Part shown: positions 1 to 61,537 of the stretch, piece by piece | Layout: the number at the start of each line of letters is the position of its first letter | Numbering within the stretch: the first letter of the stretch is position 1 | Source: Phallusia mammillata | Taxonomy: Eukaryota | Assembly: GCA_965637545.1 (NCBI GenBank) | Contig: OZ281494.1 | Location: 682,001-746,000, forward strand | Direction: 5' to 3' | Length of the DNA stretch: 64,000 nucleotides | Program-made: the position numbers and the translations under genes | The notes under the pieces: generated by a model | The model's input: only the letters and a program-made list of their open reading frames with translations | Databases searched by the model: none | What the model was told of the DNA's origin: nothing

Positions 1-3000
1 CCTGTCATGTACAATAAAATATTCGCATTTTTGAAATAAATACCTTTAATTGATATTTTGTTTCAAAACTTAAGTTTCCAATTGTAGTCGATCCATCTAA
101 ATACGGTGTTGTATGTCTTTCGTTCAGGACCAAAACATGGATTTCAACCTAAGTACAACACATTTCTCAAACTATAAAAAATTAACCTGCTTTGGATAAA
201 TGTTACCACTGCACTGAGATTATGTTTATTAATGAATTGATCAAGCCCAGTCCATCTGACCACCACAGTTGAAGCGTTGCATGCATCTCTCTTCACTGTA
301 GCTTTGACTAAAAGTGAAATAATAAGTTTCATTAAAATGCAGCGACGGTTTTGCACTGCATGTTAAACTTGGTTTTATTGCTGTGCAGCAAAGGGAATAT
401 ACAAAACCTATCTCTGTCAATTTTCCCACAGCATTTACTCGGTCATGAGATTTCTAACCTGTGACTTGGTTATATTTGTTATTTGTCAACAATCACTGAC
501 GAGACAAACGATTTATTTGGGTCACGAAATAAATCATAACACAGAGATATAGAAGTAATATAGCCATGACAGTAAGCCGCCATTGCAGATTTTTTCGGGC
601 TTGATGCGGGCCGGATTTCACATTCTGTGTTTGTAATTTTCATCGAAAATGTTACCTAGCTATTAGTAACTTAGTAAATTGAAGCTTTCAGTACACCTCA
701 ATCAATCTGTGTTGATTATGATTATCTGTAACTTGAATCTGTATTGAGCGCACGTTGGTTCAGGACGATTTCTGTAAAAGCACAGTTTATACTAGCTATT
801 AGCAGTTAGTTGCTGGAGTTAACCTACTTCCAAACGGTGCCACTACTCTGAAGTTAGGGTGAAAAAAATGTCTTAATGATCAATAGCCTTTTGATAGAGC
901 TGCGGTTGATAACTGACGCATGATCAAATGTCGTATGACAGCGGGTGATGAAATTTCGAGTGTGAATAAACCGTGCTAAAAAAACCGAAACCGTCCTGTT
1001 TAAGGCATTGTCTATTTTTACCCATCATGAATGCCTTCTCTATTGTTCTTTCTAGCCTTACTTATTTTAGGTTTTCATGGTATGAATCTGTCAATCAATC
1101 TATCCGACACCAGCAAAACTTTTCAAATAAAAAACTGGGTACCTCAGGGCTCCGTACTGGCCCCTACACTATTCAACGTATACATCAGAGACATGTCTAA
1201 AACCAAATGTCTTAAATTCGGCTATGCGGATGACTGGGCACTAAGTTTTAAGGAAATTGTCTAACAAGGATTCAAAACCAACTCACAGCTAATCTCACCA
1301 CTCTCCGGGAATACTTCACGACATGGTATCTACAAATGAATACCACTAAAACAGTAACAACTCTTTTCCATTTGGACAATCATCGCGCAAACCAACAACT
1401 CAATATTATAATTGATGGAAAGCAACTGCCCACGGACCCCAATCCGAAGTATCTTGGAATAACATTAGACAGAACTTTAAATTATAGAGAACATTTGCAG
1501 AAACTATCCAACAAGATAAAAACTAAAAACTCACTGATCAACAAACTAGCAGCCACTAGATGGGGAGCAAGTCAATCAGTCCTCAGAACATCTGCCTTAG
1601 CTCTGTGTTACAGCTCTGCAGAATACTGTGCTTCAACATTGGAGCGTAGTACTCACACTAAAAAATTGGACATCCAACTGAACAGAACAATGCAAGTAAT
1701 TTCAGGAACTCTAAAATCCACCCCTATCACATGGCTACCAACAATGAGTGCAATACCTCCCCCACACTTACGACGCAGAGCATCAGCCATGAAGATGATA
1801 CAGAATCTTCAAACACTTCCAGAGGAAATTACCCTCACCAAGATTATAAGACAAGCACCAAAAACACGTAGACTAAAATCCAGGCATCCAATCTACAACT
1901 TAGAGACTGACAACACTTTCGATATGACTGAAGAATGGAAACAATATTGGTTTAATAACATGCCCGCTGGAGGAGAGCTAGTAGACGACCCAACAACTCC
2001 ACTGCCAGGTTTCGACTTAGCACATAGATGTCACTGGGTAGCAGCGAACCGACAGCGATCAAAACATGCTCGCACTGCCCACATGCTTCAACACTGGGGC
2101 GAAAGAACGAATTCGGAATACCCACACTGTGGAGCGGATAAGCAAGATACAGACCATCTTGTCCTAAAATGCCCCACAACCAAGTTACAAGGTGGATATC
2201 GGACAGTACATGAATGCGATACAGCATTCAGCGACTGGTTTCAAAATATATCCGATCACATCTAAGTTTTTTGAGACGTGGAAATCATACGACAATATAT
2301 ATATCAATCTAGCGGGTTTCAACCGCCTTTTCACAACCAATTCGGCTTCGGACTTAAATTTTTGGGTTACGTGTCAAAGGTCTGGGCCTCTTACAGCTAT
2401 GTGGCCTCAAATGTAGGTAAACTGCAGGGAAAACAACTTTACAAACCGTGGCTTGTAATTGAATGCATACGATATTCAATTTGTAAATCATATTATTAAT
2501 TGAGCTAGATTCAAGCCAACCAATTTGCCACATTACTCACGTTTCACTTGACAAGCATAGTAAGCCACTTCCCCTCTGCAGTTCATGCTTGACTGCTCCC
2601 ATCCGATCCCATAATGCAACGCTCCCTGCTGGCAGGTTGTAACGTTGGAAACAGGAAAGTTTGCCGGAGATCCATCACTCCAATACCAACCATTCAACGA
2701 GGCGTTGTAACGAGTTCCAATAATGACATTTATATCTTTAAACACAAAATTTGCAACAGATTTTACTATTGTAAAGAAATATCGCTTATATTTTGTGTTT
2801 AACTATCAACAGAAACTAACTTGGTGTTAGGAATGATCCTTTGGTTTTTGTAAATTTTTTATATGACTTTTTCACACTTCGCAGTTTGTATGCATTTCGT
2901 CCACCAAAATAAATAAAAATTTTCTTTTGGCGTTTTCTGGTATTGTCAGCAAATAATGTATAGCGTGACGTCCACCCTACAAACCGAAATTCAATAAAAA

Positions 3001-4167
3001 AGTGGATTTTAGTAATATGTAAGGTATTCCATCCAGTATTTGTTTGTAAACTATGTTTATTTTGACTTTAACACAAAAACCTCAGTAGGTTAGGTTTCAA
3101 ATGTAACTGCAAATGAGTCTAAACGCTAAAGAATTTTAGGAATAAAACGTAATATATAAATTTACAACTAACTACTCAACACAAACCATTCCAATTCCCT
3201 TTTTTATCCAAGCCTTCACAAGTTTTTCCGACAGTTACTCCCCACTTGTAGTTGGGTTGATTTCTCCAACAATCACAAAAATAGATCGGTTGTCTTCTGT
3301 TTTGCTGATTGCTAAAAAAATATTGTCAATAGTAAACGTAGCAACCTCCAATAACTACGGTTTAGTTAATAATTCAGCCTTCATTTTGTTGTTGACTGTT
3401 AGTGGATAGTTAATGTCAGATGTTATTACCTTTTATACAAGTCAAAATACCACAGATGTCCCAGAGATTTTGTCGTTTTCCAAGTTCCATTTTCAACCGG
3501 ACTTTTCGAGTATTTGTATTGTTGATAATCAGGTTTGTAAAAAACATAAACCCGTTGCAAATCTGAAAAAGAATCTTAAAAATCACATGATATTTGATCA
3601 TAAAAATTCACACAATGAAAAATTCATATGTTTGCTGAATTTGAAACGAAATTATTTTATTTATCTCGTTTTCTTGCTTCATCTTAACCTGTCGTATATT
3701 TGTCTGTCATGAGTTGAGTGAGAGTTGTGTTGATCTGTGGGTCATTAGTCATTGCAAGATTTCCACCCAGCAAAGAACATTTTTTCTGTGCATTGTTTGC
3801 ATGCCTTTCATCGTCAGATAATATCAACACACTGTCCTTCACTGTTTGGAAAGTCTTTCTGCAACCTGTGATATTTATTGGTTTAATTTGACCTGAAAAT
3901 TTTAGTGGCGTGTAAATTTGTTTGTAAGCGATTCTGAATGAATAATGTCTGGCACTTTAGATACAATTGTTACTAAATCCAAGATGAAAGTCACAAAGGT
4001 CAAAAATCGAGGCCCGTTTTCACTTGACAATATCTGGATTTCAAATACAAGAATACAAGTAAAAACAAAAACTTTTCATTATTGGAAACATGGTTGTACT
4101 TACTGTTGATTTGTCCTTTAGAATAATAAACCAATAGCAATATCATAAAAATATTGCTTCCTGTCAT
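1..4167 (-). CDS. Paralog A: 5' part of a multi-exon CTLD-FN3 receptor (probably a receptor PTP); continues off the left edge
   Basis: GT-AG exons in compatible phase: signal peptide 4104-4167 (MTGSNIFMILLLVYYSKGQIN); CTLD exon 1 3689-3865; insert exons 3430-3562, 3187-3311, 2821-2976; CTLD exon 5 2541-2735 (IIGTRY..GWYWSDG..C..GWEQ..C..YACQV); FN3 exons 207-307 and 44-148. The next acceptor falls at position 1. No stops in the visible exons. The cytoplasmic part is not in the window. Confidence 0.85.
1090..2470 (+). mobile_element. 5'-truncated, frameshifted non-LTR retrotransposon (RT C-terminal half plus CCHC-like tail), antisense within an intron of paralog A
   Basis: ORF 1031-1264 has PQGSVLAPTLFN and YADD. 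After a frameshift near 1245-1260, ORF 1336-2265 has PKYLGITLD, RWGA..LRTSALALCYSSAEYC and a degenerate knuckle (YPHCG..DTDHLVLKCP). Ends are approximate. Confidence 0.9.
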
Positions 4168-5712: not shown

Positions 5713-6778
5713 GTTTCCATCCTGCAAATATTTGTAAGTGATATCCAAGACATGAAATGAAAAAGAGTTTGTATCATCGTTACGAAGTGAAAAACCTGAC
5801 AAACCTAAACCATAAACAGTAGAAAAAAGGTTTTGGTTACAATATACTATTGTGATCCAACAAACGTTACTGAGGTAAGTAGAACACCAACCGTTTCAAT
5901 TTCCTTTGTTGTCTAGGCCTTCACAATTGCTTCCAATGGTCACATTCCACTTTTCCATTCCCCTGTTTTTCCATGTCTCGCAGAAGTAAATTGCTTCCAT
6001 CGTGTTTTAAAGATTCCTGACAAATGTAAGTCGGTCTAATTAATAGTGACAAGTTTGTAATTAACTGTATTTCACCTTTTGTACAAGTCGAAATACCCAG
6101 ATGTCCGTAAGATTTTGTACTTTCCAGAAATCCACTTCAGCCGAATTGTTTGAGTGTTTGCATCGTTCATATGTGACGGGGTCATAAAAAATATAAAACC
6201 GTTGCAAATCTAACGGAAAGTTTCTTTATTTAAATAAGTTTTTTTTTCTATCTAGTTGATTTGCATTGATTAATTTTAAGCGTTTGTTTTGAAAATGTAA
6301 TGTTTTTACAAACCTGTAGTGTATTTGTCTGTTATGAGTTGAGTGAGAGTTGTGTTGATCTGTGGGTCATCAGTTATTGCAAGATTTCCACCCAGCAAAG
6401 AACATTTCTCCTGTGCAGTGTTTGCATCCACAAGATCGTCAAACAATATTAACACACTATCCTTCACTCCTTGAAAAGTTTTGTAAAACCTAGAAAAATT
6501 GTTTTATGTAATAAATTGTTCAACGCATTACCACGCTTGATTTTGGGCAATTGCAGTGCATGTGGCTGAGTAAATTGCAAAAATAGGCAGAATGAAATAG
6601 CCCAACGAACAGATATTAACAGTTTGGTAAGAAAAAGTCGACTTACCTTGGATAGAAACCAAGTAATCAGATATTAACACTTTAAAAAGTAAAACAGACA
6701 CTTACATTTAGTTTGTGCGGTTATAACTTGAACCATCAGGGAAATAACCACAATCGTGCTGATGTAAGGCCAACTCAT
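5710..6778 (-). pseudogene. psiA': pseudogenised 5' half of a CTLD-receptor paralog
   Basis: Signal exon 6706-6778 (MSWPYISTIVVISLMVQVITAQTK). CTLD exon 1 (~6314-6489) has a 1-nt deficit and has lost its first Cys. Insert exon 2 (~6076-6206) has two 1-nt deletions. Insert exon 3 (~5894-6020) has TAA and TGG>TGA stops. Exon 4 is cut after a few codons at the hAT junction (~5712). Confidence 0.85.
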
Positions 6779-9967: not shown

Positions 9968-12900
9968 TCACTTGAAGTTTGAATAAGTGTCGAAATCAGA
10001 CAGATACTGCAAGACGACTGAGTAGCAGTATTTGTACAGTTCCTGTAACAAAATGTATTCAATATTATGGGAAAAGTTTTAATATTTCAATCCAGAACAT
10101 TAAATAAACACAGAATTTAATCTTGCTTGTTCAGAAGTCAGAAATATGAGACCAACTTTCAGTATTCCTATTTGCTTTATTACATAAAACATTACCTTGT
10201 TGTCGACCATATTCGGTCTCATATCTCTCAGGTCTTTCACAGTTCGGAATACATCCACCCGCTTTTGTGCCTTCAAACGTTCGAGAATGTTCACCAGAGC
10301 GATGAAGGTCCCAGTTCTTGTTGATCCGTTACTGCAAATAAATCAAGTTGATTGGATTCGGTATTTTGAAAGTTTATACCAGAAAAAAACGGCTCTAGAA
10401 AAAAAAAAACGTTTTTGGATAATGTCAAAGGTGTCTAAATTGATATTGTTTGCAAGACTTTTTAACTTGAGGCATAAAGCAGTTTGGGAATGATAAAGTC
10501 GTTTACTTAACCGAAATCAAATGTACATTTCAGGTAGTTTGGTTTTAGAATTGATGCTGATATGCAGAAATATTGTTTACCTGCATCCCACCAACACACA
10601 CTGGCAAATCTGTTTTGCATTTAGTCGTTGCATTTCCTCGATAATTTTAATGAAGTCCATTTCTTTCGGGGGTCGTTTCACGTCACTCCATCCCTTGACT
10701 TGCAGAAGCATCAATTGCTGGGGAGCCTAAAATACGGAGTACAAAGATTCAATCGGAATAATATTGTACAAGAGATTTGAGATTCTATTATATTATCTAA
10801 TCTAACAAAACATAGCAACAAGGCTGCTTACAAACGCCTTGGTTGCAGACCAGACGTTGGCAGTGATCAGATTGTGAAGTTTATTCTCATTCACATCACG
10901 AACCGATACCGAAATGTCTTCGTATTGTAAAGCTGCATTGATTGGAATCTGAAAACGATGTTGTTTTAGTCAATGTTTAGTCAAACATTTTTACGCTGCT
11001 TTTTAGGTTTACTTGAATGCTGTTGTCCAAATCAACGACAAGTGAAGCTCCTCTGTCCACGATCATCTTCCAAAAGTTTTCTTCTTCTCCTGGAGCAGGA
11101 TTTCTTGCTGCGACAAAGAATTCTGAAGACCCTTGTTCCTGTATGTTGTCAAAACAAAGAAAGAGCATTTTTGGAAACGAGTAAATGTATTTTAACTACT
11201 TTAAAAAACAACAACAAACATTTACACTGAGAATGTAAATTTTATTCTGACCTGGATATAGGAAGCATCCAGCTGTTCAATGCTTTGGCTTTTATTGTCC
11301 AAAACTTTCACCGCCGTGTTCTTGTCTGAAAAATAACATGACCTGTAATTCGTGAGTAAGTAAAATATTGTCATCCATTTGTTTACATGTTCTGAGCTGT
11401 GGGTGGTTTTCCTGCCATTCTTCCCCAAATCTCCACGATGACAACGTGTTGAATTCTTTGTTTTGCATTTGCTGGCTATACAAGTTAAACCATTGGCTAA
11501 TTAGTGAATTACCACAACAACTCCTATACGAGTTTGACAGTTTATATTACCAACATGTATGCATTAATTCACTTCGTTGCTATAAAATTGCTTACAAATC
11601 ACTTGAAGTCATAGACGGGAGTTGAGTTACATCTTTATCTGTTTCCTCCAAACATTCGCGCTCCATGAGCAGTTTGTAGACAAACATGTATTGTTTCTAT
11701 AAATACACAAAGTTGGTAAGTGATGGGTATTTAATATCCAGTGTGTTGGCTGAAGTTGATTTACTTATTGTAAGGGTTCATTTCTGAGACTTACCGAATT
11801 TTGAATCATGTCGATTCGGTTCTCTCTCATTTTCAGAACGGATCTTGGCACGTCAACTGATCCCTTGTCGTCAAATTCATGAAACAAACTGTCCATCGCT
11901 ATGTAAGTACCTGTGCGTCCCACTCCAGCACTGCATACATATGTGTAGTTGATTGATCAAAACAACATAGGGTTTGTCAAGCCTTTACCTGCAGTGCACA
12001 ATGATTGGAGCATTTGTGTTTTGCAAATCATCGACCATGTTACGTAGGTGGATCATGTTGGATGTAGTTACTGGAATCCCATGATCGGGCCAAGTTGTAA
12101 ACTGCAACTGTGTTATGGTTCGTTGTTCCTAGGGATAAAACTCGCGTGATCATGTGATTAAGTTTCCTTCATGAAATTTTGCATGACAAAACCCTAATGA
12201 TAATCAAGATACTTAGAAAAGTAGGTTTGTTTTCGTTAATGCTACAAAAACTCAAGAAAATATTGTGTAACTTTCTACCTGCTATTGTTGTTGTCCAATC
12301 TCATGCCAGTTTTATTTTGCATGAAAACTTTATACGATACCGTTTGAGTATAACAAATATCTGTTAGACATTCACTTTTTTAAACAAGTTTACACATACC
12401 TTGGTTGAAGACAAAACGAACTGTCGTTGAACGATGCCACCGATGGTTACTTCATGTTGTGTTCGAACTTCCAAATTCGACATCTTAAGTTCGGATTCAT
12501 TATCAGGCCAATACTGTTCACACTTTGACTGCATGTAAAACACGTTGAAGAAGGGATAACTGTTTCTGAGTTTGAATACATTCAAACCCGACATTTTTAA
12601 CACGAAAGCAATGCCGATAGTTACCTTTCCGTTTTCCACCAAGCCAGTAAGCATTACGATGATGTTGGAGTTTTCCTGCCAAACCATCAACCAGAAATCG
12701 TTGATTGTCTCCTTCTTCGGACCCTGAGTGGCGATGAACTTCCTCTCGTTATCGTAACCCGGTATATAAGCGGCGTTGATGTAATCGTTTCCACCGCTTC
12801 CTTGCAAAACCACTCGAGCATGATCGTCTATTGAACAAACACAAGTCAAATCGACAAAATAACCTTTTCCCCGCAATTTTGATGAATGGGAAAAATCAGC

Positions 12901-15900
12901 CAATTTCACAAACTCATTTATGAAACTAATTGCATTTCGTGTTTCGCTACTTACAAGGGAAAATATTCTTGTACCGGTTTCTCACAGCATTTTGCGGCAA
13001 CTGTGACACGTCATTCGTTCGCTGGTTAGTTTTGCTTTGTTCTTCAATCTCCTAGAAGAAGTAACAAAAATATGGAATAAATAGCACTAGTTTACTGTAG
13101 TTTATTTAACTTGACTTTACATGCAGATTTTTGCCATTGTTTTGACTCTAACCTCAAACTCGTTGGCAAACATAATTCCTGACTCAACATTTTTCTTGTA
13201 CACTTCAAACAAGTTGGTGACTTTACAGTTTCTAGATGCACCAGCAGAAGGAGATAGGTTTTCGTATGTCACTTTTCCTGTTTAAACCGTAAAGTGTGAA
13301 AGTAGTGTATATCGCTATGTATATGTGCTAATTTAATGTACAGAATTCAAAACCAAGCCAGGTAATGATTGCAAACTTTACCTGTGTGAGATGCAGCGGT
13401 AAAATTGTTTACTTGTGGATATTGATCTTTTCTCATTCTATAAAAGCAATTAAACATTACGTATTGGTTCTTTAATTGCTTTCCCTCTCTATTTGTATTT
13501 CAATTGTCTTATCAGATTTTTAGTAAATTGCCTAGAAGCCTGAATCACTGCTATTATCAATGCAATGGTTTGTCTTACATTAATATGACTCAACATGAAT
13601 TCACTTTTTAGCATTTACCCATGTTGATTGAAAGGGAGGAATAAACTGAGTGTTTGTCCCATAACTTTTCGCTTGAAATCCTTTTCAAAAAAACTTTCGT
13701 TTGAGTGTGAAATCACAATAGTACTTTTAATATCAGTTTATTCCTCTTTCTCAATCAACATGAATAAAACCTACAAAGTGAATTTGCGTCGAGTCAAATC
13801 AATATGAGACAAACCATAGCTTCGATTAAAGCTGCAACGTAAAATTTTAACACGCCAAATGAATCATACACAAACCTTTGTCTCCGACGTATAAACATAA
13901 TCACCAGCCCACCAATAACAAGTACCAGAAGCAACAGCCCGATCACCAGACCAGCAATCGTTCCATGAGTCATTGGATGCTTGGCCGTGTTATCTCGTAA
14001 ACAACTTGGTGAGGGTTTATCCGGATTTGTTACTGTTACATTGGATGTGATGTTTGTGTTTATGGAGCCAGTAACAATCACTGTGATCTATAATATCAAA
14101 AAAAGAGTGTTTGGGCGCACCAAATTATAAGAACTGTGCTTACCAGGATTTCATACGAAGTAGAGTGAATGATATCTAGGATTGCGATGGAATTATCATG
14201 ATACGGGACGGAGATGGTTTGATTCAAACCCTGGACATGAATCTCAACCTGCATGTTGATGTTAGCCAAGAAAAGTTTAACGTGGTTTTGTTTGACAACC
14301 AATAAGAACTTTTATCTATACCTGCGCTGTTAGATCGTTGTTGTTGATGAATTGATTAAGTCCATTCCAACCGACAAGCACAGTTGAAGCGTTGCATGGA
14401 AACGTCTTTGCAGTTGTGACTACTACAATGCAATTAGAAAAGTTGGTTTACAATATGGGCGGTTAATCAAGGCTTGTAGTCGTTTCTTGGAAACTATATT
14501 CACTAGAAAGTGATTAACATTAAGTTTGTTTTCCACAATTTCAGTGCAACTTTCAACCAACAAGTTTATTTTTACCTTCAGGGTAACAGCTTTGAGGGGG
14601 ATTACCCGGAGTTGTTACTGTCAGATTGGATGTGATGTTCGTGTTGATTGAACCAGTGACAATCACAGTGACCTGCGATACATACAATTATGGTTCATGT
14701 CTTGGTTGTTTTAATGTTATGTTATGAATTTTAGTAAAACAGAGAGTGTATACTGAAAACGCTCAAAAGAAAGAGGTTCATTACCTGAATTTCATACCAA
14801 GAAGAGTGAATGAGATTTTCTATTATTGTCGAATTGTCAGAATAAGGGACAGAGTTTGTTTGGTGTGAACCATGAACTTGAACCACAACCTGCATGTGTT
14901 TAGGATTCAAAAACAATTCAACAAAACACAAACTTTGTTTTAAACCTGCGCTGTTAAATCGTTGTTGTTGATGAATTGATCAAGTCCGGTCCAACTGACA
15001 AGCACAATTGAAGCGTTGCATGGAATTGTCTCTACAGTCGCGTTTACTAAGAAAGTCATAGATAAGTTATAAACACATAAAGTTTATCAAAATTATGAAC
15101 ACCTTGGCTTACCTGGAGGATAGCAAGTCGATGGGAGATTTTCATAAGTTGTTACTGGCATGGAACTAGAAACGTTAGTGTTTATGCAACCCATTAGCAT
15201 TGCAGTGAGCTGTGAATATCAAAGTTGTTTAAAGTTGTTATTTATGAAGGACTCCAGTACAAATAGATAAACTTAGATGAACAGTTTAGGCCTAGGGCAA
15301 TTTTTATTTTTGGTTGCATCATTCGATAATGAAAATGTTTAAGTGGTGGCTGCTCGAACCTATCAAGCAACATAAATTGAATTCAAATTTGGGTTAGAAG
15401 GGCATGTTTGTCGTTTATTGTATTTCAATCGATTTGATTTGTTTGGTGAATATTTTTAACCTACTTACAGTGAAGCTATACTGTGTTTCGAAGCTTAGGT
15501 TTCCAATGGTTGTGTTTTGATCTGCATACGGTGCTATGATTCTCTTGTGTGTTTCCAAAACGTAAATTTCAACCTGAATGCAATGTTTGTAAAAAGGCAT
15601 GACACCTGCATGCCAAAAAACTTAATGCGATGAAATATAACCTTTGCATTGAGATTATTATTATTGATGAATTGATTAAGTCCAGTCCAACTGACAAGCA
15701 CAGTTGATGCGTTGCATTTAGATTTCTTTACATAAACCTGGACTAAATGTGGATAAAAAGGTTAAATGTCCATGGCTGCAGAGGAACCAGAAAAAGCTGT
15801 AATAATTCGCCAAAAAACGCCAGAACAAGCACTGTATCATTGAAAAACAAATCATCAAAACGCTAAAGATATTAGGAACCCTAATCTGTAATTAGAACAA

Positions 15901-17895
15901 AATTGTATTATTTAGATATATGTAAGTGCACAAACGAATAAAAAAGATTGGAGAATCATTTTATGAAGCTCTGTCCATCGTTTACCTGAGCAAAATAATT
16001 TGTTTTAAAATTCTCACATGTTACTTGACAAGCGTAGTAAGCCGGTTCCCCACTGCAGTTCATGCTTGACTGATCCCATCCGATCCCATAATGCAACGCT
16101 CCCTGCTGGCAAGTTGTAACGTTGGAAACAGGAAAGTTTGCCGGAGATCCGTCGCTCCAAAACCAACCATTTGACGACGTGTTATAACGAGCTCCAATAA
16201 GAATCCTAATGTCTAGAACAACATTTCCGAATCTTATTTAAAAATATAAATAAAAGATCGGTAAATATTTTCTTTTTGTGTATGTTTTCAAACCAAACGC
16301 TCACTTGGTGCCAGAAACGATCCCTCGTATTTTGTAAAAGTTTGATACGGCTCATTGACACTGCGTAACTTGCTTGAATATGGTTGCTGCGTTTTCCTTC
16401 CATAGTTAAATATTTCTTTTTGAAGTTTTTCTATGTTAGTGTTGGAATACAAGGAATACTGGAAATTCCAGCCTGCAAACAGTACAGATTTCGTTGCAGG
16501 TCAACACTATGTAGGTTTTTGTTTGACTACAGTAATAAAGATTAAAGGAAAACGTATTAGTTTAAACGGGATGAATAGCAAGATAGTAATAAATAAAAAG
16601 TGTAAGTGGTGAGTTATACAAAAAAATCATTTTATTGGAAATCTACACGCTTTAAATAAAACAGTATAAACAGCATTTTGCCATTCATGACTAATTTTGT
16701 TTCGGTTGTTGTTGGAGAATTTAGAGACCTTAGTGTGTTTGTTGCATTGTGTAATGTTTTGCTCAATTTAGGCCTCAACGAAAACAATTATTACAACTTA
16801 AAAATTTTAGCACCGACATTGTGGAACGTTAATAAAGCTGAGTAAAACGTAAACCTTTGACCCCACAGTATCTTCCAATGGTCACATTCCACCTCTCAAT
16901 GCCTTCGAGCGAAACAAAAGAACAGAAGCAAATTTTTTGACTATGAGTTTCAGGATTGCTGCTGGATAATACTTGGTTTAACTCTTTGTATCAATTAGTT
17001 TGTAAGTTATTTAAAAGTGTCACCTTTTGTACAAGTCGAAATACCACAGATGTCCAAGCGACTTTGTACTAGTCCAACCCACTTCAGTCGGATTTTTTGA
17101 GTATTTGTATCGTCTAGGATCGGTGGTATTGTAAAAAATATAAACTGTTTCTAAATCTGAAAAAAACGTTACGATTACTTGCTTTTTCTCTAATCTGTGG
17201 CAAGAATGATGTAAAATTGGTTGATTTAAAGCTAACTTTATGCCTAACTATGGTTACAACATAGTCTGTCGTTTAACTATTAACTACTATAATTACAATA
17301 TCATTGTTTTTCTTTACGAAACCTGTTGTGTATTTGTCTGTCATGAGTTGATTGAGAGTTGTGTTGATCTGTGGGTCATCAGTCATTGCAAGATTTCCAC
17401 CCAGCAAAGAACATTTCTCCTGTGCAGTGTTTGTATCCACAAGATCGTCAGATAATATCAACACACTGTCCTTCACTGCTTTCAGTGTCTTGTTGCAACC
17501 TTAAAATAAAAGTGTTCACGTTTTCAGGAGATTGGTGTGTTTGCTATTGTTTGGCTTTCATGATCTTGTTGTAGCTTGAAATATATTTACTAGTGTTCAA
17601 TTCAAATCACTTGCACCTTATGTTTGGGAACTAATCGTTTGTTCTTTACTTTCGCTTAAAATGTCACATCTTGAGCTTTTAGTTTAAATTACACAAAACC
17701 TAAGCAAAAATTACAACATGCAGAAGAGCAACATCTTCCAATGATCGATCAGTAATCTTGCACCATCACCTTTTGTTTTACAAATTGTACCCACATTGTT
17801 GTACATTATTGTTGGACCTACTTACTATTGTATTGTCCCGTCGAACACTGAATCAAAACCAAAACCAAAATATTACTTAGGTTATTTCCCTTCAT
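9968..17895 (-). CDS. Paralog B: complete receptor-type protein tyrosine phosphatase (signal, split CTLD, 3xFN3-like, TM, D1, D2); 30 exons, about 1206 aa by hand count
   Basis: Exons: 17826-17895; 17323-17499; 17024-17156; 16855-16958; 16305-16472; 16018-16212. FN3: 15642-15742, 15469-15573, 15113-15209, 14946-15046, 14785-14889, 14576-14672, 14322-14422, 14144-14248. TM: 13876-14087. Juxtamembrane: 13382-13437, 13153-13277. D1: 12955-13051 (NRYKNIFP), 12625-12827 (DYINA, FIATQGP), 12400-12528 (KCEQYWP), 11989-12128 (WPDHG, VHCS), 11795-11930 (AGVGRTG), 11596-11696. D2: 11387-11475, 11252-11325, 11013-11138, 10832-10948, 10581-10726, 10196-10331, 9968-10042 (FDTYSNFK*). All phases join with no internal stop. 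Confidence 0.93.
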
Positions 17896-19010: not shown

Positions 19011-22000
19011 TTATTTTGTTGGTGCAAGTAGCACGTCATTTGCTAAGCTGTACAAAATAAAATAAAAACGAAATTTTAACTCTATGCTATGTGGCAACTC
19101 TATGCGTGTGTCTCGCTTCTTAAGTAATTTACCATTTGTAGGCCTGTCAGAAACAAAATAAGCTCGATTTAAATTCAATTAACTTATATACCTTACTCTA
19201 AGTATCAGCCTAAGAATTCAAATTCTGACGTAGTTTGAGAATGCATTGAAACAAAATGACAGAAGATCACCTCTCAAAATTGATAAATGACAATAATACA
19301 TTGTTACATAAACTTATCTATCTTAAACTTTCAATTAAAAACATTGACCTGTGTGTTCGGCGCACAAACATGACCACCAGGCCAACATTGACAAGTACCA
19401 GAAGCAACAGTCCGATCACCATACCAGCAATCATTCCAACTTTAGTTGCGTAATCTGCTGTGTTATCTCCAGGAAAACAGCTTGGTGGGGGATCACCCGG
19501 AGTTGTGATATTTGTGTTGATTGAACCGGTGACAATCACTGTGACCTGCGATGTATCAAAAAATATGTGTCGGGTCTGGGTTACTTTGATCTTATGTTAC
19601 GTAGAGAGTTATTCTTTTTAATTTTCTGCCAAAACAGGGAGTGAATTTTGAAAGCGAACAAAATAAAAAGTGTTATTACCTGCATTTCATAGAAGGTAGA
19701 GTAATTGAGACCTTCGAGTACTGTAAAATTGTCTGAATACGGATATGAGATGGTTTGGTGCGAACCATGGACTTGAACCTCAACCTGAATGCAATTGGGT
19801 GCAATGAAGGATTCAAATAACAGTTCAACAAACCCGAAACTTTGTTTTCCACCTGCGATATTAGGTCGTTTCCGTTGATTAATAGATCAAGTCCGGTCCA
19901 TTTGACTAGCACGGTTGAAGGGTTGCATGGAAATGTCTCTGCACTCGTGTTTACTTCGAAAATCATTGGTAAGGTTTGAAATTCAAATTCCACATTTTTA
20001 CAAACCACGTTTGCTTACTTTGAGGATAGCAACTTGATGGGGGATTTTCATTAGTTGTTACTGTTTTTGTTGTTGAGACGTTGACGTTTATGCATCCTGT
20101 AAGCGTTGCAATGATCTGAATATCAAAGTTGTTTGAAGTTGTTGTTTTTAAAAGGTTCCAGTTTAAACAGTTAAGTTTAAAAGAATCAAACAGTTCTTGT
20201 ATGTTTTACTTTAGTTACATTATTTGGTAATTAATATAAGCTTAGTTGTTTGGTTGTCTATCGGCTTCAACTTTGCCATCGAACGAAATACATTGCATTC
20301 AAGTATGTTTTGACAGCGATATATTTCAGATAGATGCAAACTTTTCCAGTGATTAATTTGCACTACTTACAGTGATCTTATATTCTGTTCCAAAGCTTAG
20401 GTTTCCAATTGTTGTGTTTTGATCTGCATACGATGCTAAGATGGTCTTGTTTACTCCCAAAACAAAAATTTCAACCTAAATACAACATTTGTAAAAAGGC
20501 ATAACACCTGCATGTTTAAAAAAACTTGATGTGATGAATCAATACCTTTGCATTGAGATTGTTATCGTTGATGAATTGATTAAGTCCAGTCCAACTGACA
20601 ACCACAGTTGATGCGTTGCATTTGGATTTCTTTACACCAGCCTTAACTATAGGTTGGTTAAAAGATTATATGACTTACTGGAATAATACAACGCTGTAAT
20701 ATCTTGCAAGAAACTTCACAATGAAGTCATGCAATGTATCATTTAAAAATCATCAAATCGCAAAATATATTAGAAATGCTTTTCTTGTAATCTGAACACA
20801 ATCGTTTTGTTTTGATCTGTTAGTACAGAAACAAATCTAAACAATACAGAGATATTGTGTGAAGTCTCTCGTTTACCTGACCTAAACGAATGTGTTTCGT
20901 AATTACTCACATTTTACTTGGCAACCGTAGTAAGCCGGTTCCCCACTGCAGTTTATGCTTGACTGCTCCCATCCGATCCCATAATGCAACGCTCCCTGCT
21001 GGCAAGCTGTAACGTTGGAAACTGGTAAGTTTGCCGGAGAGCCGTCGCTCCAATACCAGCCGTTCACAGACGCATTGTAATGAGCTCCGATTAAGAGGTT
21101 AATGTCTGGAAAAATTTGCAAATCTTACTTAAAAATATAAACAACAAAATCGTTTTTTGTCTTTGTATGTTGTCAAACCAAACGCTCACTTGGTGCCAGA
21201 AACGATCCGTCATATTTTTTGAAGTTCTCATACGTCTGATGGACACTTTGCAACTTGCTTGAAGAAGGCGGTGTATATCTTCCGTAGGTAAATATTTCTT
21301 TTTTGCGCGTCAATGTGTTAAATTCGGAAAATAAGGAATACCGGAATTGCCATCCTGAAAGCAGTACAGATTTAGTTGCAATTCAACCCAATGCAAAAAG
21401 GTTTTTGTTTGACCACGGTAATGAAGATGCAAAGGAGAAGGTATTAGGAACACGGGATGAATGGCAAGATAATATCAAAAAAGTGTAAGTTAGGCATGCC
21501 GAAAAAAAATTATTGGAAAACTACACGATTTAAATAAAACAGTATAATCAGCATTTTGCTATTTATTAACAATTTTGTTTCGGTTGTTGGAGAATTAAGA
21601 GACCGTAGTGTGTTTGTTGCCTTGTGTAATGTTTTGAGTAAGTTGAGACATCAATAAGAACATTTAATACAACAGTTTGCTATCTTTGTGTAAAATGTTA
21701 GTACCATCGTTTTGTGGTGGAACGTTAATAGTTACTTAAACACAAACCATTACGGGCACAGGTTCTTCCAATGGTCACATTCCACCTCTCTGTGTCGCCT
21801 CTGATTTCATAATTGCAGAAGTAAATTTCTTGGCTATGAATTCCAGGATTGCTGCTGGACAATAGTATGTTTAACTGTTTGTATCAATTGGTTTGTATTT
21901 AAAACTGTCACCTTTTATACAAATCGAAATACCACAGATGTCCAAGAGATTTTGTACTTTTCCAACCCACTTCAGCGGCATTCTTTGAGTATTTGTATCG

Positions 22001-30500: not shown

Positions 30501-32758
30501 TATTGTCAGATTAAAATCCCTGACGCGAATCTCGACCTGCATGTTTGTGACATATTTTTCATTTGATAAGAAACAACGACAAAAATGTATGTTTTACTAC
30601 CTGAGCTGTTAGATTGTTAATGTTGATGAATTGGTCAAGTCCAGTCCAACTGACAAGCACAGTAGAAGCGTTGCATGGAAATATCTTTGCAGTCGCGTTT
30701 ACTATGAACAACGTTGTTAAAGGTGGAAGTAGTAAATAGTTCCTTATAAATAATTGGAATTGAATATTCAACATAACACGTTGGCTTGCACAGAATCGCT
30801 TACTAAAACATATTTCCTATGCATGTTACTAATTTTAAACGAAACTTGAATCCATAACAGTAATAGGAAAACCACAATCCAGGCTGGGTAGTGAGCGATT
30901 ACAGGTTTTGTTGTTTTATAATTACTTACGTTTTACTTGACAAGCGTAGTAAGCCGGTTCACCACTGCAGTTCATGCTTGACTGCTCCCATCCGATCCCA
31001 TAATGCAATGCTCCTTGCTGGCAAGTTGTAACGTTGGAAACGGGAAAGTTTGCCGGAGATCCGTCGCCCCAATACCAACCATTTAACGAAGTGTTGTAAC
31101 GAGCTCCGATCAGAACATTGATATCTTAAAAATGCTTGTGTTGGTGTACCCAAATCATCATGGTTGTTTTTGCGTTTTTTTTTAAAAATATAATCGCTTA
31201 CTTGGTGTCAGAAACGATCCTTTGGAAATGTTAAAACTTTCATATGACGCATTAACACTTCGCAATTTATACGAATTTATGCCACCGTTGTAGTTAAATA
31301 TTTCTTTTTGGCGTTTCCTCTTGGTAGTGTCGGAAAACAAAGAAAACTGTAAGGTCCATCCTGCAAATATCACATATTGTAACAAATGTGTCTGTTGTTG
31401 CTGACTAAATGAAACAGCTAAAACTATTAATTTGCAATCGGCTTCTTTGCGATATCTAAAGTAACTGATTTGTTTCAACTCACACCGTTCCATTTTCCTT
31501 CACTATCCGGCCCTTCACATGTTGTCCCAATATCTACTCTCCACTTGTAATCCGGTTCTGTCCAAGCATCGCAGAAATAAATGGATTCCATCGTATTTTT
31601 GACATTACTGTTGGACAAAAGTGGTTGTGTTAATTTTGACAAACAAATTTGAAACATTATTTGTCGTCAAATAATCTGATAAAGTTTTTAACCTTTCATA
31701 CAAATCGAAATACCACAGATGTCCAAGAGATTTTGTACTTTTCCAAGGATACACTTCATTCAAATTATACGAGTATTTGTATCGCCTATTTTCGTCTTCG
31801 TAAAAAATATAAACCCGCTGTAAATCTGAAACAAATGTTTATTCAATATATTAAAAATTACAATTAAAAATGTTTTTTTATTTATAAAAAGCCACCACAA
31901 ACCTGTTGTGTATTTGTCTGTCATGAGTTTAGTGAGAGTTGCGTTGATCTGTGGGTCATCAGTCATTGCAAGATTTCCACCCAGCAAAGAACACTTCTCC
32001 TGTGCAGTGTTTGCATCCACAAGATCGTCAGATAATATTAACACACTGTCTTTCACTGCCTCCACAGTGTTATTGCAAGCTAAAAAATCAATTCGCGGTT
32101 AGTTTACATTTTTCCTAAGTAATGATTATGTACTTTGTAATCCAGAGTGATTACGCTCTGAAGCAAAAACACAAACACTATTTATGATTTTTACTGTTAC
32201 TAAGAAGGACGAACGTGACTTTGAACAACAATACTATGGTCCATCCCAAACTGTAATTCGGAAGCAAAGATACTTCAGATGCTTTTGTATTTGTTTCATG
32301 ACACCAAAATGCGTAACGTTGGTTTCGTGAGCAAAACGTTTCTTTGTCGACCAAGTTAAATGTCCGATGTCTATTTTCATAATAACTTTCTTTAGTTTGT
32401 TTAGAGCTCAAACAGGGCTGGGTTACGCAACTACCGTACGATGATTTATAACAAGGATGATTTTAACAGATGTAACCAACTTCCATCGATGTAATCAGCT
32501 GAATTTAAAAAAATCGCAAAACTTTTGCTAGAAATGCCAATGCCAGAAACAATTCATTTTTGTTGGAGAACATTTGTTTAATTCCTGAAGTATGAAAGTA
32601 AAACACTATTTTTGTACAGTAAAAAATACTTCAAAAAACTTTTATTTCATGTATTTAACGCTAGTAGGCTACTTACTGTTTGCTTGTCCCGTCGAATACT
32701 GAATAAAAGTTAAAACCAAAAATGTCCTCAAGTCATTACTCTTTATAGCTGAGAGCAT
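24526..32758 (-). CDS. Paralog C: complete receptor-type PTP (split CTLD, 2xFN3-like, TM, D1, D2), 27 exons
   Basis: Signal exon 32677-32758 ([27 protein letters not shown]); CTLD exon 1 31903-32079; insert exons ~31692-31824, 31490-31610, 31203-31360; CTLD exon 5 ~30930-31124; two FN3 triplets; TM exon 29174-29388. D1 has KNRYKNIFP (~28290-28388), [38 protein letters not shown]2 ends FDTYSNYK* at 24526. Confidence 0.9.
29870..30030 (-). mobile_element. tRNA-derived SINE copy in an intron of paralog C
   Basis: The reverse complement gives a B-box remnant GTTCAATTCCCACCGCAGG and body GACCGGCTGATTCGGT..ACGCCTTTAATGGGCCT, matching the SINE at 61209-61470. Confidence 0.7.
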
Positions 32759-39648: not shown

Positions 39649-42600
39649 TTATGTTTTTGTTTCGTATGTAGGGTTTTCATTTGTTGCTCTGTAGTTTTCG
39701 TATTCATGTTGATCTGTAGTTTTGTCGTCAGAGTTTGCTGCAAAACAGATTGTAAATTCCATTGTCAACAGTTTGAGGCTTTTAACTCATACAATAAGTT
39801 ATTGGATGTGTAATGTGTTGGGTTCAAACTTTGTACGATAAACTTGAGTCTTTGCAGCAGAAATTTTTCTTACCTTCGTTACTCTGATGTGGAAACTGTT
39901 CCTGAGTCGCTTGTTTTTTTTAGATGCTTTACTATTTGAAGTTCTGTGGAAACAAATTTTGCTTATTATGGTGCTCTGTGGGAAAAACGAGTGTTTGGAA
40001 TTGAAATTAAGTTGGGACAGCAATCGGACCTAGAGTTTGTGGTTCTAATCTCTAACTGTTTCGAGTTTAAACAAAGTAAACAAATTGCTCAGCTGGTGGA
40101 ACAAAGGTAATTAAAACAGCTGCGATTGCAGGCACCTGCGTCTTCGGCGAATAAACATGACTATTAGCCCAACCATGACAAGGAGCAGAAGCAAGAGGCC
40201 GATCGCCAAACCAGCAATCATTCCAACACTCGTTGCAGGTAAACCGCACGAAGGGGGATTACCTAAAGTGGTTACTGTCAGATTGGATGTGATGTTTGTG
40301 TTGATTGAACCAGTGATAATTACTGTGACATGCAATACAAAGATGTTTTGTTGTTGTACGTGATAAACTATAATGGCATGTGTCAAAAACCGACGGATTA
40401 TAATTCTACAAAAAGTTACTTACAAAAATATGGTATGAAATAGAAAGCAAGAGATCTTGAATTATTGTCGTGTTATCTGAATACGGGACGGAGATTGTTT
40501 GATTCAAACTCATGACAACAATCTGAACCTGCAGCAAGGTATAAGTTTGTTTCAACAATTTATGTTTGTCGACTAGAAATCAAACCAAAAGCAACACACA
40601 ATATATTTTGTACCCGTGCTGTTAAATTGTTGTTGTTGATGAATTGGTCAAGTCCAGTCCAACGAACAAGCACAGTTGAAACGTCGCATGGAAATGTCTC
40701 CGCAGTCGTGTTCACTACAAAAATCGTTGTTAAGGTTTGGACACGGTAAATGTTTCCTAACTCTTGGAATTTAATATACCACACAACACGTAGCACGCTT
40801 GCTTACCTGGTGAATAACAACTTGATGGAGGCTTTCCAAAAGTTGTTACTGTTTTCGATGTTGAGACGTTAGTGTTCAAGCATCCGGTAAGCATTGTAGT
40901 GATCTGAAACGTTTAAGCTGTATCACTTAAATTATGCCTTCAATTGAAGCATTCAAAAATTAAGAATCAAGGTCTGGACTTTTAATTTTTATAGGCACTG
41001 ATACGATGCTCTAACTTGACAAATAATTTGTACTTCTACTATACATTGCTTACGGTAATGTAGTAATTAGTTGCTAAACTTAGGTTTTCGATGGTTGTCG
41101 ACAGAATAGCATATGGTGCAATGAATTTTCTGTTCATTTCCAAGACATAAATTTCAACCTAAACGAAACATTTGTTAAAATCAAGAAGTTAACGGACGTA
41201 TATAAACTGTATGTCACTTCTGCATAAAGTTTATTGTTGCGGATGAATTGATCAAGTCCAGTCCAACTGACCAACACAGTTGAAGGGTTGCATGGAGTTG
41301 TATCCATAGTCGCTTTAACTAGAAAAAAGTTTAAATTAAATATTCATGAAAAGCATATTGTCTAGCGACACGATATAAAAGTATGTGCAAACATATTTGC
41401 AAAAAGATCATTGGAACACAAATTAATGTCAAGAAGACATTTACTTGTTTTTGCTGACTGATTTACTTGAAATTACTCACATTTCACTTGACAAGCGTAG
41501 TAAGTCGATTCACCACTGCAGTTTATGCTTGACTGCTCCCATCCGATCCCATAATGCAACGCTCCCTGTTGACAAGTTGTAACGTTGGAAACGGGAAAGT
41601 TTGCCGGAGATCCGTCGCTCCAATACCAACCATGTAACGACGTGTGGTAACGAGCTCCAATCAAAACGTTAACGTCTGAAAAAGAAATGGCAAATACTAT
41701 TTATGCACAACGATAGGTTTTGCATGTCTGGTGCCTAAATGTTGTTGGGTACCCACTTTCCGCCAAGAACGATCCCTCATATATGGTGAAGTTTTGAAAA
41801 GTTTCGTTGACACTTCGTAACTTGCTTGAACGTTTTGGTTTTCCGCGTCTATAGTTAAATACTTTTTTTCGGCTTTTTCTGGTGTAAGTGTCGGAAAACA
41901 AGAAAAACTGTAATGTCCATTCTGTAAACAAACATAAATTAATCAAATAACAATAAATGAGCCTGAGATCTTTTTTATTGACATGGCAATAGGGTAGAAA
42001 TCAAGGTTTGAAACATGGCAGTTACGTTTTGTATTGAGTTTTCGTTCTTTGTGAATGGCTGTATAAACAAACCCACTTTTTACGTACCAGTTTGTTATTA
42101 TGAAAAATAAAACATTTTTTTTTTAAACAAAAAACGGTTACACACAAATTTTGGGTTATTTTTCATACACACATTTTTTTAAATACATAGATTTGACATC
42201 TGCCTTATATAACGGTTAACTAAATTACTAAGTTTATTCACACTAACGGTTCCAATCTCCATTGGGCGCGAGGCCACTGCAATTTCTTCCAATAGTGACA
42301 TTCCACCGCTCATTGACAGTGTTTCTCCCATAGTCGCAAAAATAAATTGGTTGACTTTGGTTTTTAGGATTGCTGTTGAAAAAAATAAAGTAAATATATG
42401 TATATATATTTACATATGTATGGTTACGATTTCCATGGTTGCTGTTAAATGTGTTTACTTGATTAGCAGACCGAAATACCACAGATGTCCGAGAGATTTT
42501 GTACTTTTCCAGAAATCCTCTTCAGCCGAATTGTTTGAGTATTTGTATCGTTCATGTTTGTCTTCGTAAAAGATATAAACCCGCTGCAAATCTGTTTTTT

Positions 42601-45754: not shown

Positions 45755-45881
45755 AGCCGACCGCACGATCCTGGCAGGGTAGGTCCTGTTGCATAAGACA
45801 GTAGTTGAACTCGCGAGTTTTGTTGGCCCAATGAAACCCGCCTTAACAGGAAACTTCAGCGCGGTTCCTCGGAACGTTTCC
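45752..45881. repeat. 130-bp direct repeat, right copy (partner 43531-43660)
   Basis: Same sequence as the left copy; continues as unique GC-richer DNA to ~45990. Confidence 0.92.
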
Positions 45882-56100: not shown

Positions 56101-57269
56101 GTACAAGATTCATTTTTGCGGTTGCCCAGTTACATTCCGCTATGTGGACATAATAGTCTTTTTTATTGTGCGTTGGTAAAGGTACTTGAAAACGTAACGT
56201 TGGTGGTGTGATATACTAGCAAGTGTTTAGCGCCGAGCATTTATTCTATATCGCTATCCTATGGTACAATCGGATTTACTCCACGTTGAATTCTCAAACC
56301 TATTTCTGCTGGTGTGGATATTGCTCAGTTCAGAATCAATAAAATCAATAAAGCGTGGAAAACGACTTGTTATTTCCATGTGTTAATGACCTCGCGTGCC
56401 AACCTTTTTTCAATATAACAATGGTTCGAGCCAGCTGATATCAATAATAAAAAGAAAGCAGAGCGTTTTGTGTATGTAAAGCTAAATTTTAAAAGTCGAA
56501 AGCCTTATTACTTACAGTGTATCTCACAATCTTCTCCAACAGTTACAATCCACCTCTCATCATTAGGACCACTTCCAAAATTGCAGAAGTAAATTTGTTG
56601 CATGGTGTTTGTAGTATTGCTATTTAACAAATTGCATGTTTTTATGATCAGGTGTGTTAATGTCAAAATCTATTACCTCTTATACAAGTCGAAATACCAC
56701 AGATGTCCGAGTATTTCAGAACTATTCCAACCTTCTTCAATCGAATTAAATGAGTATTTGTAATACGTGTTGTAAAAAATATAAATTCTCTGCAAATCTG
56801 AAACGATGTTTGTTTACTAATTTTTATCACGAGTATCAAAATGAAATGTGCAGCCATGAGTAAGGTCGTTGATGCAATAATGATTTAATTTTTAAAACCT
56901 TTTTTGTTTAATAAGTTTCTTTTCAGATTTGGAGAATACCAGTTGGGGTACTTTCATCTGCCCAAACCTGTCGTGTATTTGTCAGTCATGAGTTGATTAA
57001 GAGTTGTGTTGATCTGTGGGTCATCAGTCATTGCAAGATTTCCACCCAGCAAAGAACATTTCTTCTGTGCATTGTTTGCATCCACAAGATCGTCAGATAA
57101 CATCAACACACTGTCCTCCACTGCTTGCATGGTTTTGTTACAATCTGACAAAGAAATGAATGAATGTCATAGCGTTGCTGTGATTGTTTACAGTATTCTA
57201 CTTCTTACTTGCAGCTGATGACCATTGCGCAAGCAGCATCACGAAAAACGCCACAGTCCTGTTTATCAT
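47127..57269 (-). CDS. Paralog E: complete receptor-type PTP with five FN3-like repeats, about 36 exons
   Basis: Signal exon 57209-57269 ([20 protein letters not shown]); CTLD exon 1 56968-57144; insert exons ~56677-56797, 56516-56619, 55637-55792; CTLD exon 5 ~55359-55553; five FN3 triplets ~51545-55170; [30 protein letters not shown]1 has [38 protein letters not shown]2 has VVCSNGSTR and ends FDTYSNFQ* at 47127. Confidence 0.9.
49805..50213. mobile_element. hAT-type MITE (409 bp) in a D1 intron of paralog E
   Basis: Ends CAGTGGTTCTCAAC...GCTAAGAACCACTG; flanks TTCTAGAC / GTTTAGAC (6/8 match); GGACCAC subterminal repeats and palindrome TAGACCACTAGTGGTCTA. Confidence 0.85.
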
Positions 57270-61470: not shown

Positions 61471-61537
61471 AGATTTATTAATGAAAATGCAGCAGTTTTG
61501 ACAGTTTCAACTACAGCTTGGCACGGTTTTTACCAAC

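What the first reader, a model, noticed from the sequence alone, without database searches (positions are those of the whole stretch)
16855..16958. Hypervariable loop on a fixed Cys-Trp-Cys scaffold in the inserted cassette
Seen, exon 3 across copies: A IYFCDCWRNQPNYKWGVTVGKTC; B ICFCSFVSLEGIERWNVTIGRYC; B' IYFCNYEIRGDTERWNVTIGRTC; [23 protein letters not shown]; D IYFCDYGRNTVNERWNVTIGRNC; [24 protein letters not shown]. The IxFC and WxVx(I/V)GxxC frame is constant while the loop between is almost unalignable. Exons 2 and 4 show the same patchwork (invariant LGHLWYF and KLxSV, variable neighbours). CTLD exons 1 and 5 are far more conserved. Inference: a disulfide-pinned, diversified ligand-binding surface.
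Basis: partly seen in the sequence, partly recalled or inferred. Interest (0 to 1): 0.75.

Follow-up and report, generated by a model that had tools for sequence, protein, structure and literature searches.

The report
Variable hairpin tip in lectin-receptor insert
A small exon repeated in over 100 receptor genes of this invertebrate genome encodes a strictly conserved Cys-Trp-Cys frame around a very variable 9-12-residue tip, but the tip changes at about the neutral rate, so it looks like a loosely constrained surface loop, not a proven selected binding site.

Summary
Window 16855-16958 (minus strand) is a 104-nt exon with AG/GT borders, and all six quoted peptides are found as written. A seventh copy, a pseudogene at 5892-6016, was missed.

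Genome-wide, an exon-3 profile finds 120 places. All 50 unique intact copies I could fetch keep the first Cys, the Trp and the Val. The second Cys is kept in 47 of 48. The frame also occurs in 86-nt exons of another species, with the same splice phases.

- **Frame:** strong purifying selection (omega 0.19).
- **Loop:** omega 0.74 (95% CI 0.53-1.06) on a 50-copy tree, and 0.79 in 19 independent sister pairs.
- **Single sites:** no loop site shows significant positive selection.
- **Other patches:** equally variable stretches occur in exons 2 and 4.
- **CTLD exons:** part of their greater conservation is lower synonymous divergence, not only protein-level constraint.

An exon-3-only AlphaFold model gives a beta-hairpin whose tip is the variable stretch. 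The most likely reading is a loosely constrained hairpin tip on a conserved insert domain in a rapidly duplicating lectin-like receptor tyrosine phosphatase family. The disulfide and any ligand binding remain untested. Other notes of this scan describe the same gene family elsewhere in this genome.

The parts
16855..16958 (-). Exon 3 of copy B (104 nt, phase 2 to 1), the finding itself. It encodes NPETHSQK-ICFC-SFVSLEGIER-WNVTIGRYC-GVK.
   Evidence: AG acceptor at 16959-16960 and GT donor at 16853-16854. HMM match. Homologous exon in 120 genome places.
16922..16933 (-). Conserved base of the hairpin, first strand: I-C-F-C (family consensus I-Y-F-C). The Cys is invariant in 50 of 50 copies.
   Evidence: Per-site test: the Cys has beta 0.00, p 6e-5.
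16892..16921 (-). Variable loop, i.e. the hairpin tip (10 codons, SFVSLEGIER in copy B). There are 42 distinct versions among 50 copies.
   Evidence: Entropy 2.1-2.8 bits. Omega 0.74, CI 0.53-1.06. The turn sits at residues 18-19 of the exon-3 model.
16865..16891 (-). Conserved base, second strand and second Cys: W-N-V-T-I-G-R-Y-C (W and V invariant; Cys in 47 of 48).
   Evidence: Frame omega 0.19. The two x positions (N24 and R29 of the exon) are the only nominal positives in exon 3.
17024..17156 (-). Exon 2 of copy B (cassette, phase 1 to 2), carrying the invariant YKYS and LGHLWYF.
   Evidence: 129 genome matches.
16305..16472 (-). Exon 4 of copy B (cassette, phase 1 to 1), carrying the invariant KLRSV and GSFL.
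17323..17499 (-). Exon 1 of copy B: N-terminal half of the lectin-like domain (phase 1 to 1).
   Evidence: The only PDB profile hit is a CTLD, CLEC4a4, E 1.2, in the correct register.
16018..16212 (-). Exon 5 of copy B: C-terminal half of the lectin-like domain ([14 protein letters not shown], three conserved Cys).
   Evidence: PDB profile hits KLRG1 (E 0.028), Dectin-1 (0.29) and mannose receptor CRD.
3187..3311 (-). Exon 3 of copy A (long form, 125 nt).
5892..6016 (-). Exon 3 of pseudogene copy A' (two in-frame stops).
21748..21851 (-). Exon 3 of copy B' (short form).
31486..31607 (-). Exon 3 of copy C (long form, 9-residue loop).
42248..42372 (-). Exon 3 of copy D (long form).
56516..56619 (-). 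Exon 3 of copy E (short form).

Best explanation
Exon 3 belongs to a three-exon insert of about 130-140 residues. The insert splits the lectin-like (CTLD) head of a very large, tandemly duplicated family of receptor-type tyrosine phosphatase genes (head, repeats, transmembrane helix, two phosphatase domains). The exon most likely folds as a beta-hairpin. The base of the hairpin (I-Y-F-C on one strand, W-x-V-x-I-G-x-x-C on the other) packs into the insert domain, is probably stapled by the two cysteines, and is held by strong purifying selection. The distal 9-12 residues form an exposed tip with almost no sequence constraint. As the genes duplicate and diverge, the tip drifts at close to the neutral rate, gains and loses whole codons, and is occasionally replaced by exchange between paralogs. 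This produces many different tips on one frame.

What is shown: exon structure, conservation of the frame, the rates, and the lack of a positive-selection signal. What is inferred: the hairpin (from a model of the exon alone), the disulfide, surface exposure, and any role in binding.
For: All six intact window copies have canonical splice sites and consistent phases. The exon has 120 genome copies, always next to exon 2. The frame is invariant or nearly so in 50 unique copies.

Codon likelihood on a 50-copy cassette tree gives frame omega 0.19 and loop omega 0.74, CI 0.53-1.06. Nineteen independent sister pairs give loop dN/dS 0.79 (64.4 nonsynonymous against 17.6 synonymous differences, where neutrality predicts about 4.5:1) and frame 0.23. 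Per-site tests find 54 of 142 cassette sites negative, 6 nominally positive at p<0.1, none in the loop and none that would survive correction. The empirical-Bayes grid finds no loop site with P(beta>alpha)>0.9, and core loop sites have both rates raised. Other patches are equally variable and near neutral, for example exon 4 columns 175-186 with omega 0.98.

Loop exchange between paralogs shows in 3 of 50 copies. AlphaFold2 on exon 3 alone (44-sequence alignment) gives mean pLDDT 82.5, strands 9-17 and 20-27, with the turn at 18-19. A second species has 86-nt exon-3 homologues with the same phases and frame but a 6-residue loop. Copy B continues into PF00102 phosphatase exons.
Against: Omega near 1 can also come from purifying and positive selection acting on the same sites, or from episodic selection, which my tests do not detect. 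Some sister pairs are strongly skewed to replacements in the loop (9.5N/0.5S and 7N/1S). Two x positions inside the frame are nominally positive (FEL p 0.03 and 0.06; posterior 0.91-0.92). Recombination among paralogs and loop indels can bias tree-based estimates either way. The hairpin comes from a 34-residue fragment modelled out of context. Only about half of the genome's copies could be fetched. 'Intact' was judged on exons 1-5 only, so some copies may belong to dead genes.
Confidence: 0.62

Rival explanations
1. One reading: the tip is a ligand-contact surface kept diverse by diversifying selection, as in immune or allorecognition receptor families.
For: There are 42 distinct tips among 50 copies on an invariant frame. 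The variable residues cluster at a predicted hairpin tip. The family is huge and tandemly arrayed. A few sister pairs have many replacements and almost no silent changes in the loop. Sites 135 and 140 are nominally positive. The tip is longer here (9-12 residues) than in the other species (6).
Against: Region omega is 0.74-0.79, with the upper confidence limit about 1.06. No loop site is significant. Both synonymous and nonsynonymous rates are raised in the loop core. Other patches of the cassette behave the same way. No expression, polymorphism or binding data exist.
Confidence: 0.2
2. The variability mainly reflects decay. Many copies are parts of dead or dying genes, so the loop is simply unconstrained sequence in pseudogenes.
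For: 22 of 83 gene models are defective within exons 1-5. A' in the window is a pseudogene. Other notes of this scan report many broken copies further downstream (unchecked).
Against: Within the same copies the frame, LGHLWYF and KLRSV are under strong purifying selection (54 negative sites, frame omega 0.19). Splice sites and phases are kept in 61 models. The frame is conserved across species. General decay would raise omega everywhere.
Confidence: 0.1
3. Tip diversity is generated mainly by templated exchange (gene conversion) between paralogs and pseudogene fragments, not by point substitution.
For: L056 carries a B'-type loop on L065-type flanks, and L065 and L024 share a loop across clades. 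Synonymous and nonsynonymous rates are raised together in the loop core. Partial exon 2/3 fragments lie beside intact genes.
Against: Only 3 of 50 copies show discordance between loop and flanks. No pair has a near-identical loop on distant flanks.
Confidence: 0.08

Closest known systems
C-type lectin-like domain (CTLD, Pfam PF00059) receptors in tandem clusters, e.g. the NK-cell KLR/Ly49 and Dectin-1 cluster
   Same: Exons 1 and 5 carry CTLD hallmarks. Their best solved relatives are KLRG1, Dectin-1 and CLEC4a4, matched in the correct register. The genes sit in tandem arrays of paralogs with variable surface loops.
   Different: Here the domain is split between helix alpha2 and strand beta2 by a 130-140-residue three-exon insert that has no Pfam or PDB relative. 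The EPN/QPD and WND sugar/calcium motifs are absent (sequence). The receptor is type I and has two phosphatase domains.
Immunoglobulin V-domain CDR3 (Y-x-C, loop, F/W-G-x-G)
   Same: There is a superficial motif likeness. The exon-3 profile's best PDB hits are mouse lambda light chains at FR3/CDR3, 'EAIYFCALW'.
   Different: E-values are 0.3-1.4 over 13-16 residues, which is chance level. There is no FGxG and no upstream partner Cys at Ig spacing. The whole Cys-Trp-Cys unit spans only about 26 residues.
Diversified invertebrate recognition families (snail FREPs, amphioxus VCBPs, sea-urchin 185/333, Botryllus fester/FuHC); named from my own knowledge, not tested here
   Same: Lineage-specific, highly expanded or variable families of surface or secreted recognition molecules.
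   Different: Those families rest on evidence of positive selection, somatic or allelic diversification, or function. Here dN/dS is at or below 1 and there are no functional or polymorphism data.
Receptor-type tyrosine phosphatases with two catalytic domains (PTPRA/PTPRC-like layout)
   Same: A transmembrane helix is followed by two PF00102 domains in copy B.
   Different: The outer part is a CTLD with an insert plus repeats that Pfam does not recognise. I found no paper describing this layout.

Membership tests
C-type lectin-like domain (PF00059) | Significant profile match to the family | tested here: inconclusive
The single exon halves give no Pfam hit at E<=1. Profile searches against PDB put CTLDs on top for both halves, in the correct register, but weakly: KLRG1 0.028, Dectin-1 0.29, CLEC4a4 1.2.
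C-type lectin-like domain (PF00059) | Four core cysteines (C1-C4, C2-C3), a WIGL-like strand and the W-x-W-x-DG motif | tested here: met
   Cys at alignment columns 29, 245, 263 and 272 is kept in 100, 100, 92 and 100% of 50 copies. LIGARY and GW[YF]WSDGS are present.
C-type lectin-like domain (PF00059) | Calcium/sugar-binding motifs (EPN or QPD, and WND) of true C-type lectins | tested here: not met
   The sequence has W-E/D-Q in place of WND and no EPN or QPD. It is therefore lectin-like, not shown to be a lectin.
Selection-diversified recognition site (as in MHC, KIR/Ly49 contact residues) | dN/dS significantly above 1 at the variable sites | tested here: not met
   Loop omega is 0.74 (CI 0.53-1.06) and 0.79 in sister pairs. 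No loop site is positive.
Selection-diversified recognition site | Variable residues exposed and clustered on a folded scaffold | tested here: inconclusive
   The exon-3-only AlphaFold model places them at a hairpin tip, pLDDT 82.5. The full-domain model was not made.
Disulfide-stapled loop | The two cysteines bonded to each other | not testable with these tools
   Both Cys are conserved in nearly all copies, in four exon-3 variants from other-species contigs, and in copies lacking the exon-1 N-terminal Cys. No coordinates or chemistry are available.
Immunoglobulin V-like CDR3 | Y-x-C, loop, [FW]-G-x-G, with a partner Cys and Trp at Ig spacing | tested here: not met
   Only a 13-16-residue likeness, E 0.3-1.4. 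No FGxG and no Ig spacing.
Receptor-type protein tyrosine phosphatase | PF00102 catalytic domain(s) after a transmembrane helix in the same gene | tested here: met
   Copy B has PF00102 hits at 12367-12981 (1e-31), 11768-11956 and 10103-10342. The transmembrane exon lies at 13797-14087.

The most novel reading that the evidence does not exclude
The insert is an undescribed recognition module. It would be a conserved beta-rich domain grafted into a lectin-like fold, presenting a hairpin whose tip differs in nearly every one of more than 100 receptor-phosphatase genes, so that the array works as a germline-encoded repertoire for non-self or allorecognition. Selection would then be episodic, or would act through tip exchange, and would be invisible to average dN/dS.
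Probability: 0.15. Interest if true: 0.75.

Novelty: new variant of a known kind. Interest (0 to 1): 0.36.

Why it matters
If the tips were selected binding determinants, this would be a new kind of germline receptor repertoire in a close invertebrate relative of vertebrates, and it could be tested directly by swapping tips. As the evidence stands, the value is more modest. The work documents a conserved, undescribed insert domain in a lectin-like fold. It gives exact exon models for it. It also shows that the contrast between a 'hypervariable' cassette and the conserved lectin exons has two sources: near-neutral drift of surface patches, and unusually low synonymous divergence of the lectin exons.

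Tried and rejected
- **Pfam on each exon piece:** no family hit for exons 1-5.
- **Exon-2 profile against 1.84 billion proteins:** only four real hits, all short ORF fragments from metagenome contigs. The rest were bacterial repeat proteins sharing 'VYIFYNDG' by chance. No full-length annotated protein was found, so none was available for folding.
- **Metagenome scan with the window's exon-2 profile:** nothing. An alignment of the foreign fragments found 15 loci.
- **Ancestral-state counting (SLAC-type):** I used likelihoods that sum over ancestors instead.
- **Ig-like reading of 'IYFC...W':** rejected as chance level.
- **Pervasive loop swapping:** rejected as the main source of diversity, since only 3 of 50 copies are discordant.
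- **Literature:** two searches found no description of this family.
- **Joined spliced protein:** not sent to any search or folding tool. Exons were joined only inside local scripts, from coordinates, for codon alignments and trees.

Full report
**What is at the coordinates**

The window has 36% G+C and carries a minus-strand tandem array of eukaryotic genes. The interval 16855-16958 is one exon of 104 nt. It has an AG acceptor and a GT donor and runs from phase 2 to phase 1. It encodes NPETHSQK-ICFC-SFVSLEGIER-WNVTIGRYC-GVK.

The exon is the middle one of a three-exon cassette:
- exon 2, 17024-17156
- exon 3, 16855-16958
- exon 4, 16305-16472

The cassette lies between two exons that together look like one C-type lectin-like domain: exon 1 at 17323-17499 and exon 5 at 16018-16212. 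Downstream, copy B continues into repeat exons, a transmembrane exon and two PF00102 phosphatase domains.

The lectin-like reading rests on weak but concordant evidence. Single halves get no Pfam hit. The exon-5 profile's best solved relatives are KLRG1 (E 0.028), Dectin-1 and mannose-receptor CRDs. The exon-1 profile's only hit is CLEC4a4. All of these match in the right register. The four core cysteines and the W-x-W-x-DG motif are conserved. The sugar/calcium motifs are absent.

**Check of the observation**

All six quoted peptides occur exactly as written. I built exon models for the six intact window copies, and all have canonical splice sites and matching phases. Exon 3 comes in a short form (B, B', E) and a long form (A, A', C, D) that adds about seven residues after the second Cys.

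**Scale of the family**

A profile of exon 2 finds 129 places in the window's own 240-Mb genome, and a profile of exon 3 finds 120. Most lie in a cluster at about 0.59-1.82 Mb on the same contig. These loci and the window gave 83 gene models. Of them, 61 were intact over exons 1-5, which collapse to 50 unique coding sequences, and 22 were defective.

In the 50 unique copies the first Cys, the Trp and the Val are invariant, and the second Cys is present in 47 of 48. LGHLWYF and KLRSV are near-invariant. There are 42 distinct loops, with a length of 10 residues in 36 of 50 copies. The loop's entropy (2.1-2.8 bits) is matched by patches in exons 2 and 4.

**Selection tests**

Exons were joined only inside local scripts, from coordinates, to make a codon alignment and maximum-likelihood trees. 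The joined protein was not sent to any search or folding tool.

Global omega is 0.46 for the cassette and 0.42 for the lectin exons. Results by partition:

| Partition | Omega |
|---|---|
| Exon-3 frame | 0.19 (p 2e-13 against 1) |
| Exon-3 loop | 0.74 (95% CI 0.53-1.06) |
| Loop, only the 36 copies with a 10-residue loop | 0.70 |
| Exon-3 lead-in | 0.78 |
| Exon-3 tail | 0.78 |
| Other variable patches of the cassette | 0.41-0.98 |

- **Per-site tests:** 54 of 142 cassette sites are negative and 6 are nominally positive at p<0.1. None of the 6 is in the loop, and none would survive correction.
- **Empirical-Bayes grid:** four sites exceed 0.9 posterior for beta>alpha. Two of them are the x positions of W-x-V and G-x-x-C. 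No loop site does, and the loop core has both rates raised.
- **Sister pairs:** nineteen phylogenetically independent pairs give loop dN/dS 0.79, frame 0.23, exon 1 0.42 and exon 5 0.29.

The stretch is still not a linker, because its frame is strongly constrained.

**Why the lectin exons look so much more conserved**

Mean pairwise synonymous difference is 0.16 in exon 1 and 0.28 in exon 5, against 0.41-0.54 in the cassette. On the cassette tree the synonymous rate is 0.42 and 0.73, against 0.82-1.10. Divergence of the lectin exons plateaus at about 0.10-0.13 whatever the cassette distance, while the adjoining introns are unalignable. Part of the contrast is thus homogenisation or synonymous constraint of exons 1 and 5. 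This remains unexplained.

**Structure**

No annotated full-length protein was available. The exon-2 profile against 1.84 billion proteins found only four short ORF fragments. AlphaFold2 on exon 3 alone, with 44 paralogs, gives a beta-hairpin with strands at residues 9-17 and 20-27, a turn at 18-19, and mean pLDDT 82.5. In that model the 'loop' is the distal half of the hairpin. This is a fragment modelled out of context, and no coordinates were available to check the Cys-Cys distance.

**Relatives elsewhere**

The four fragments and 15 further metagenome contigs carry exon 1, exon 2, an exon-3 homologue and exon 5 in the same order. Their exon 3 is 86 nt with the same phases. It encodes x-x-F-C, six residues, W-x-V, four or five residues, then C. 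The frame therefore predates this genome's expansion, and the tip is longer here. Other notes of this scan call the genome a sea squirt and describe the same family elsewhere in it. I did not verify the taxon.

**Other checks**

- The exon-3 profile's likeness to mouse lambda light-chain FR3/CDR3 is at chance level.
- Loop exchange between paralogs is visible in 3 of 50 copies.
- Two literature searches found no description of the family.

**Verdict**

The most likely reading is a loosely constrained hairpin tip in a rapidly duplicating receptor family.

Noticed in passing
G000:C1 about 765.8-836.6 kb (outside the window; coordinates): Exon-2 matches pair up as exact mirror images: start plus end coordinates all sum to about 1,602,458-1,602,460. 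This means an inverted duplication (palindrome) centred near 801,229 with arms of at least 35 kb. Nearby blocks are present three to five times (for example at 1289957, 1300429, 1495281, 1685376 and 1694485). Whether this is real structure or an assembly artefact was not tested.
   Followed up: no
window exons 1 and 5 of all copies, e.g. 17323-17499 and 16018-16212: Synonymous divergence of the lectin exons is two to three times lower than in the cassette and plateaus at about 0.1-0.13, while the introns right beside them are unalignable. This points to exon-limited homogenisation or constraint on silent sites.
   Followed up: partly
window 5892-6489 (-): Pseudogene copy A'. Exons 1-3 only, with frameshifts in exon 2 and two stops in exon 3. 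Exons 4 and 5 are missing.
   Followed up: yes
window 45668-45763 (-): Orphan fragment of a lectin exon 5 (32 residues, 75% identical to copy B) with no exons 1-4 nearby.
   Followed up: no
window 61536-61715 (-): An eighth exon 1 (copy F, 75% identical to B) close to the window's end. No exon 2-5 match for it was found in the window.
   Followed up: no
window 1252-2262 (+): A 337-residue open frame that looks like a non-LTR retrotransposon reverse transcriptase, lying just past the 3' end of copy A's lectin-domain exons.
   Followed up: no
L038 (G000:C4:22.88 Mb) and L039 (G000:C1:0.677 Mb): Over exons 1-5, copies on two different contigs differ by three silent changes in exon 1 and one replacement in exon 3. 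This is either a very recent copy between contigs or an assembly duplication.
   Followed up: no
L013, L014, L015, L044, L045 (first gene model in each): Partial exon 2/exon 3 fragments (profile positions 16-43 and 9-25, one TGA) sit just upstream of intact genes. They are possible relics or conversion donors.
   Followed up: no
window 16880-16888 and equivalents (W-N-V-T): The position after the invariant Trp is Asn in 54% of copies and the position two further on is Thr in 76%, giving an N-x-T glycosylation sequon in many copies at the base of the hairpin.
   Followed up: no
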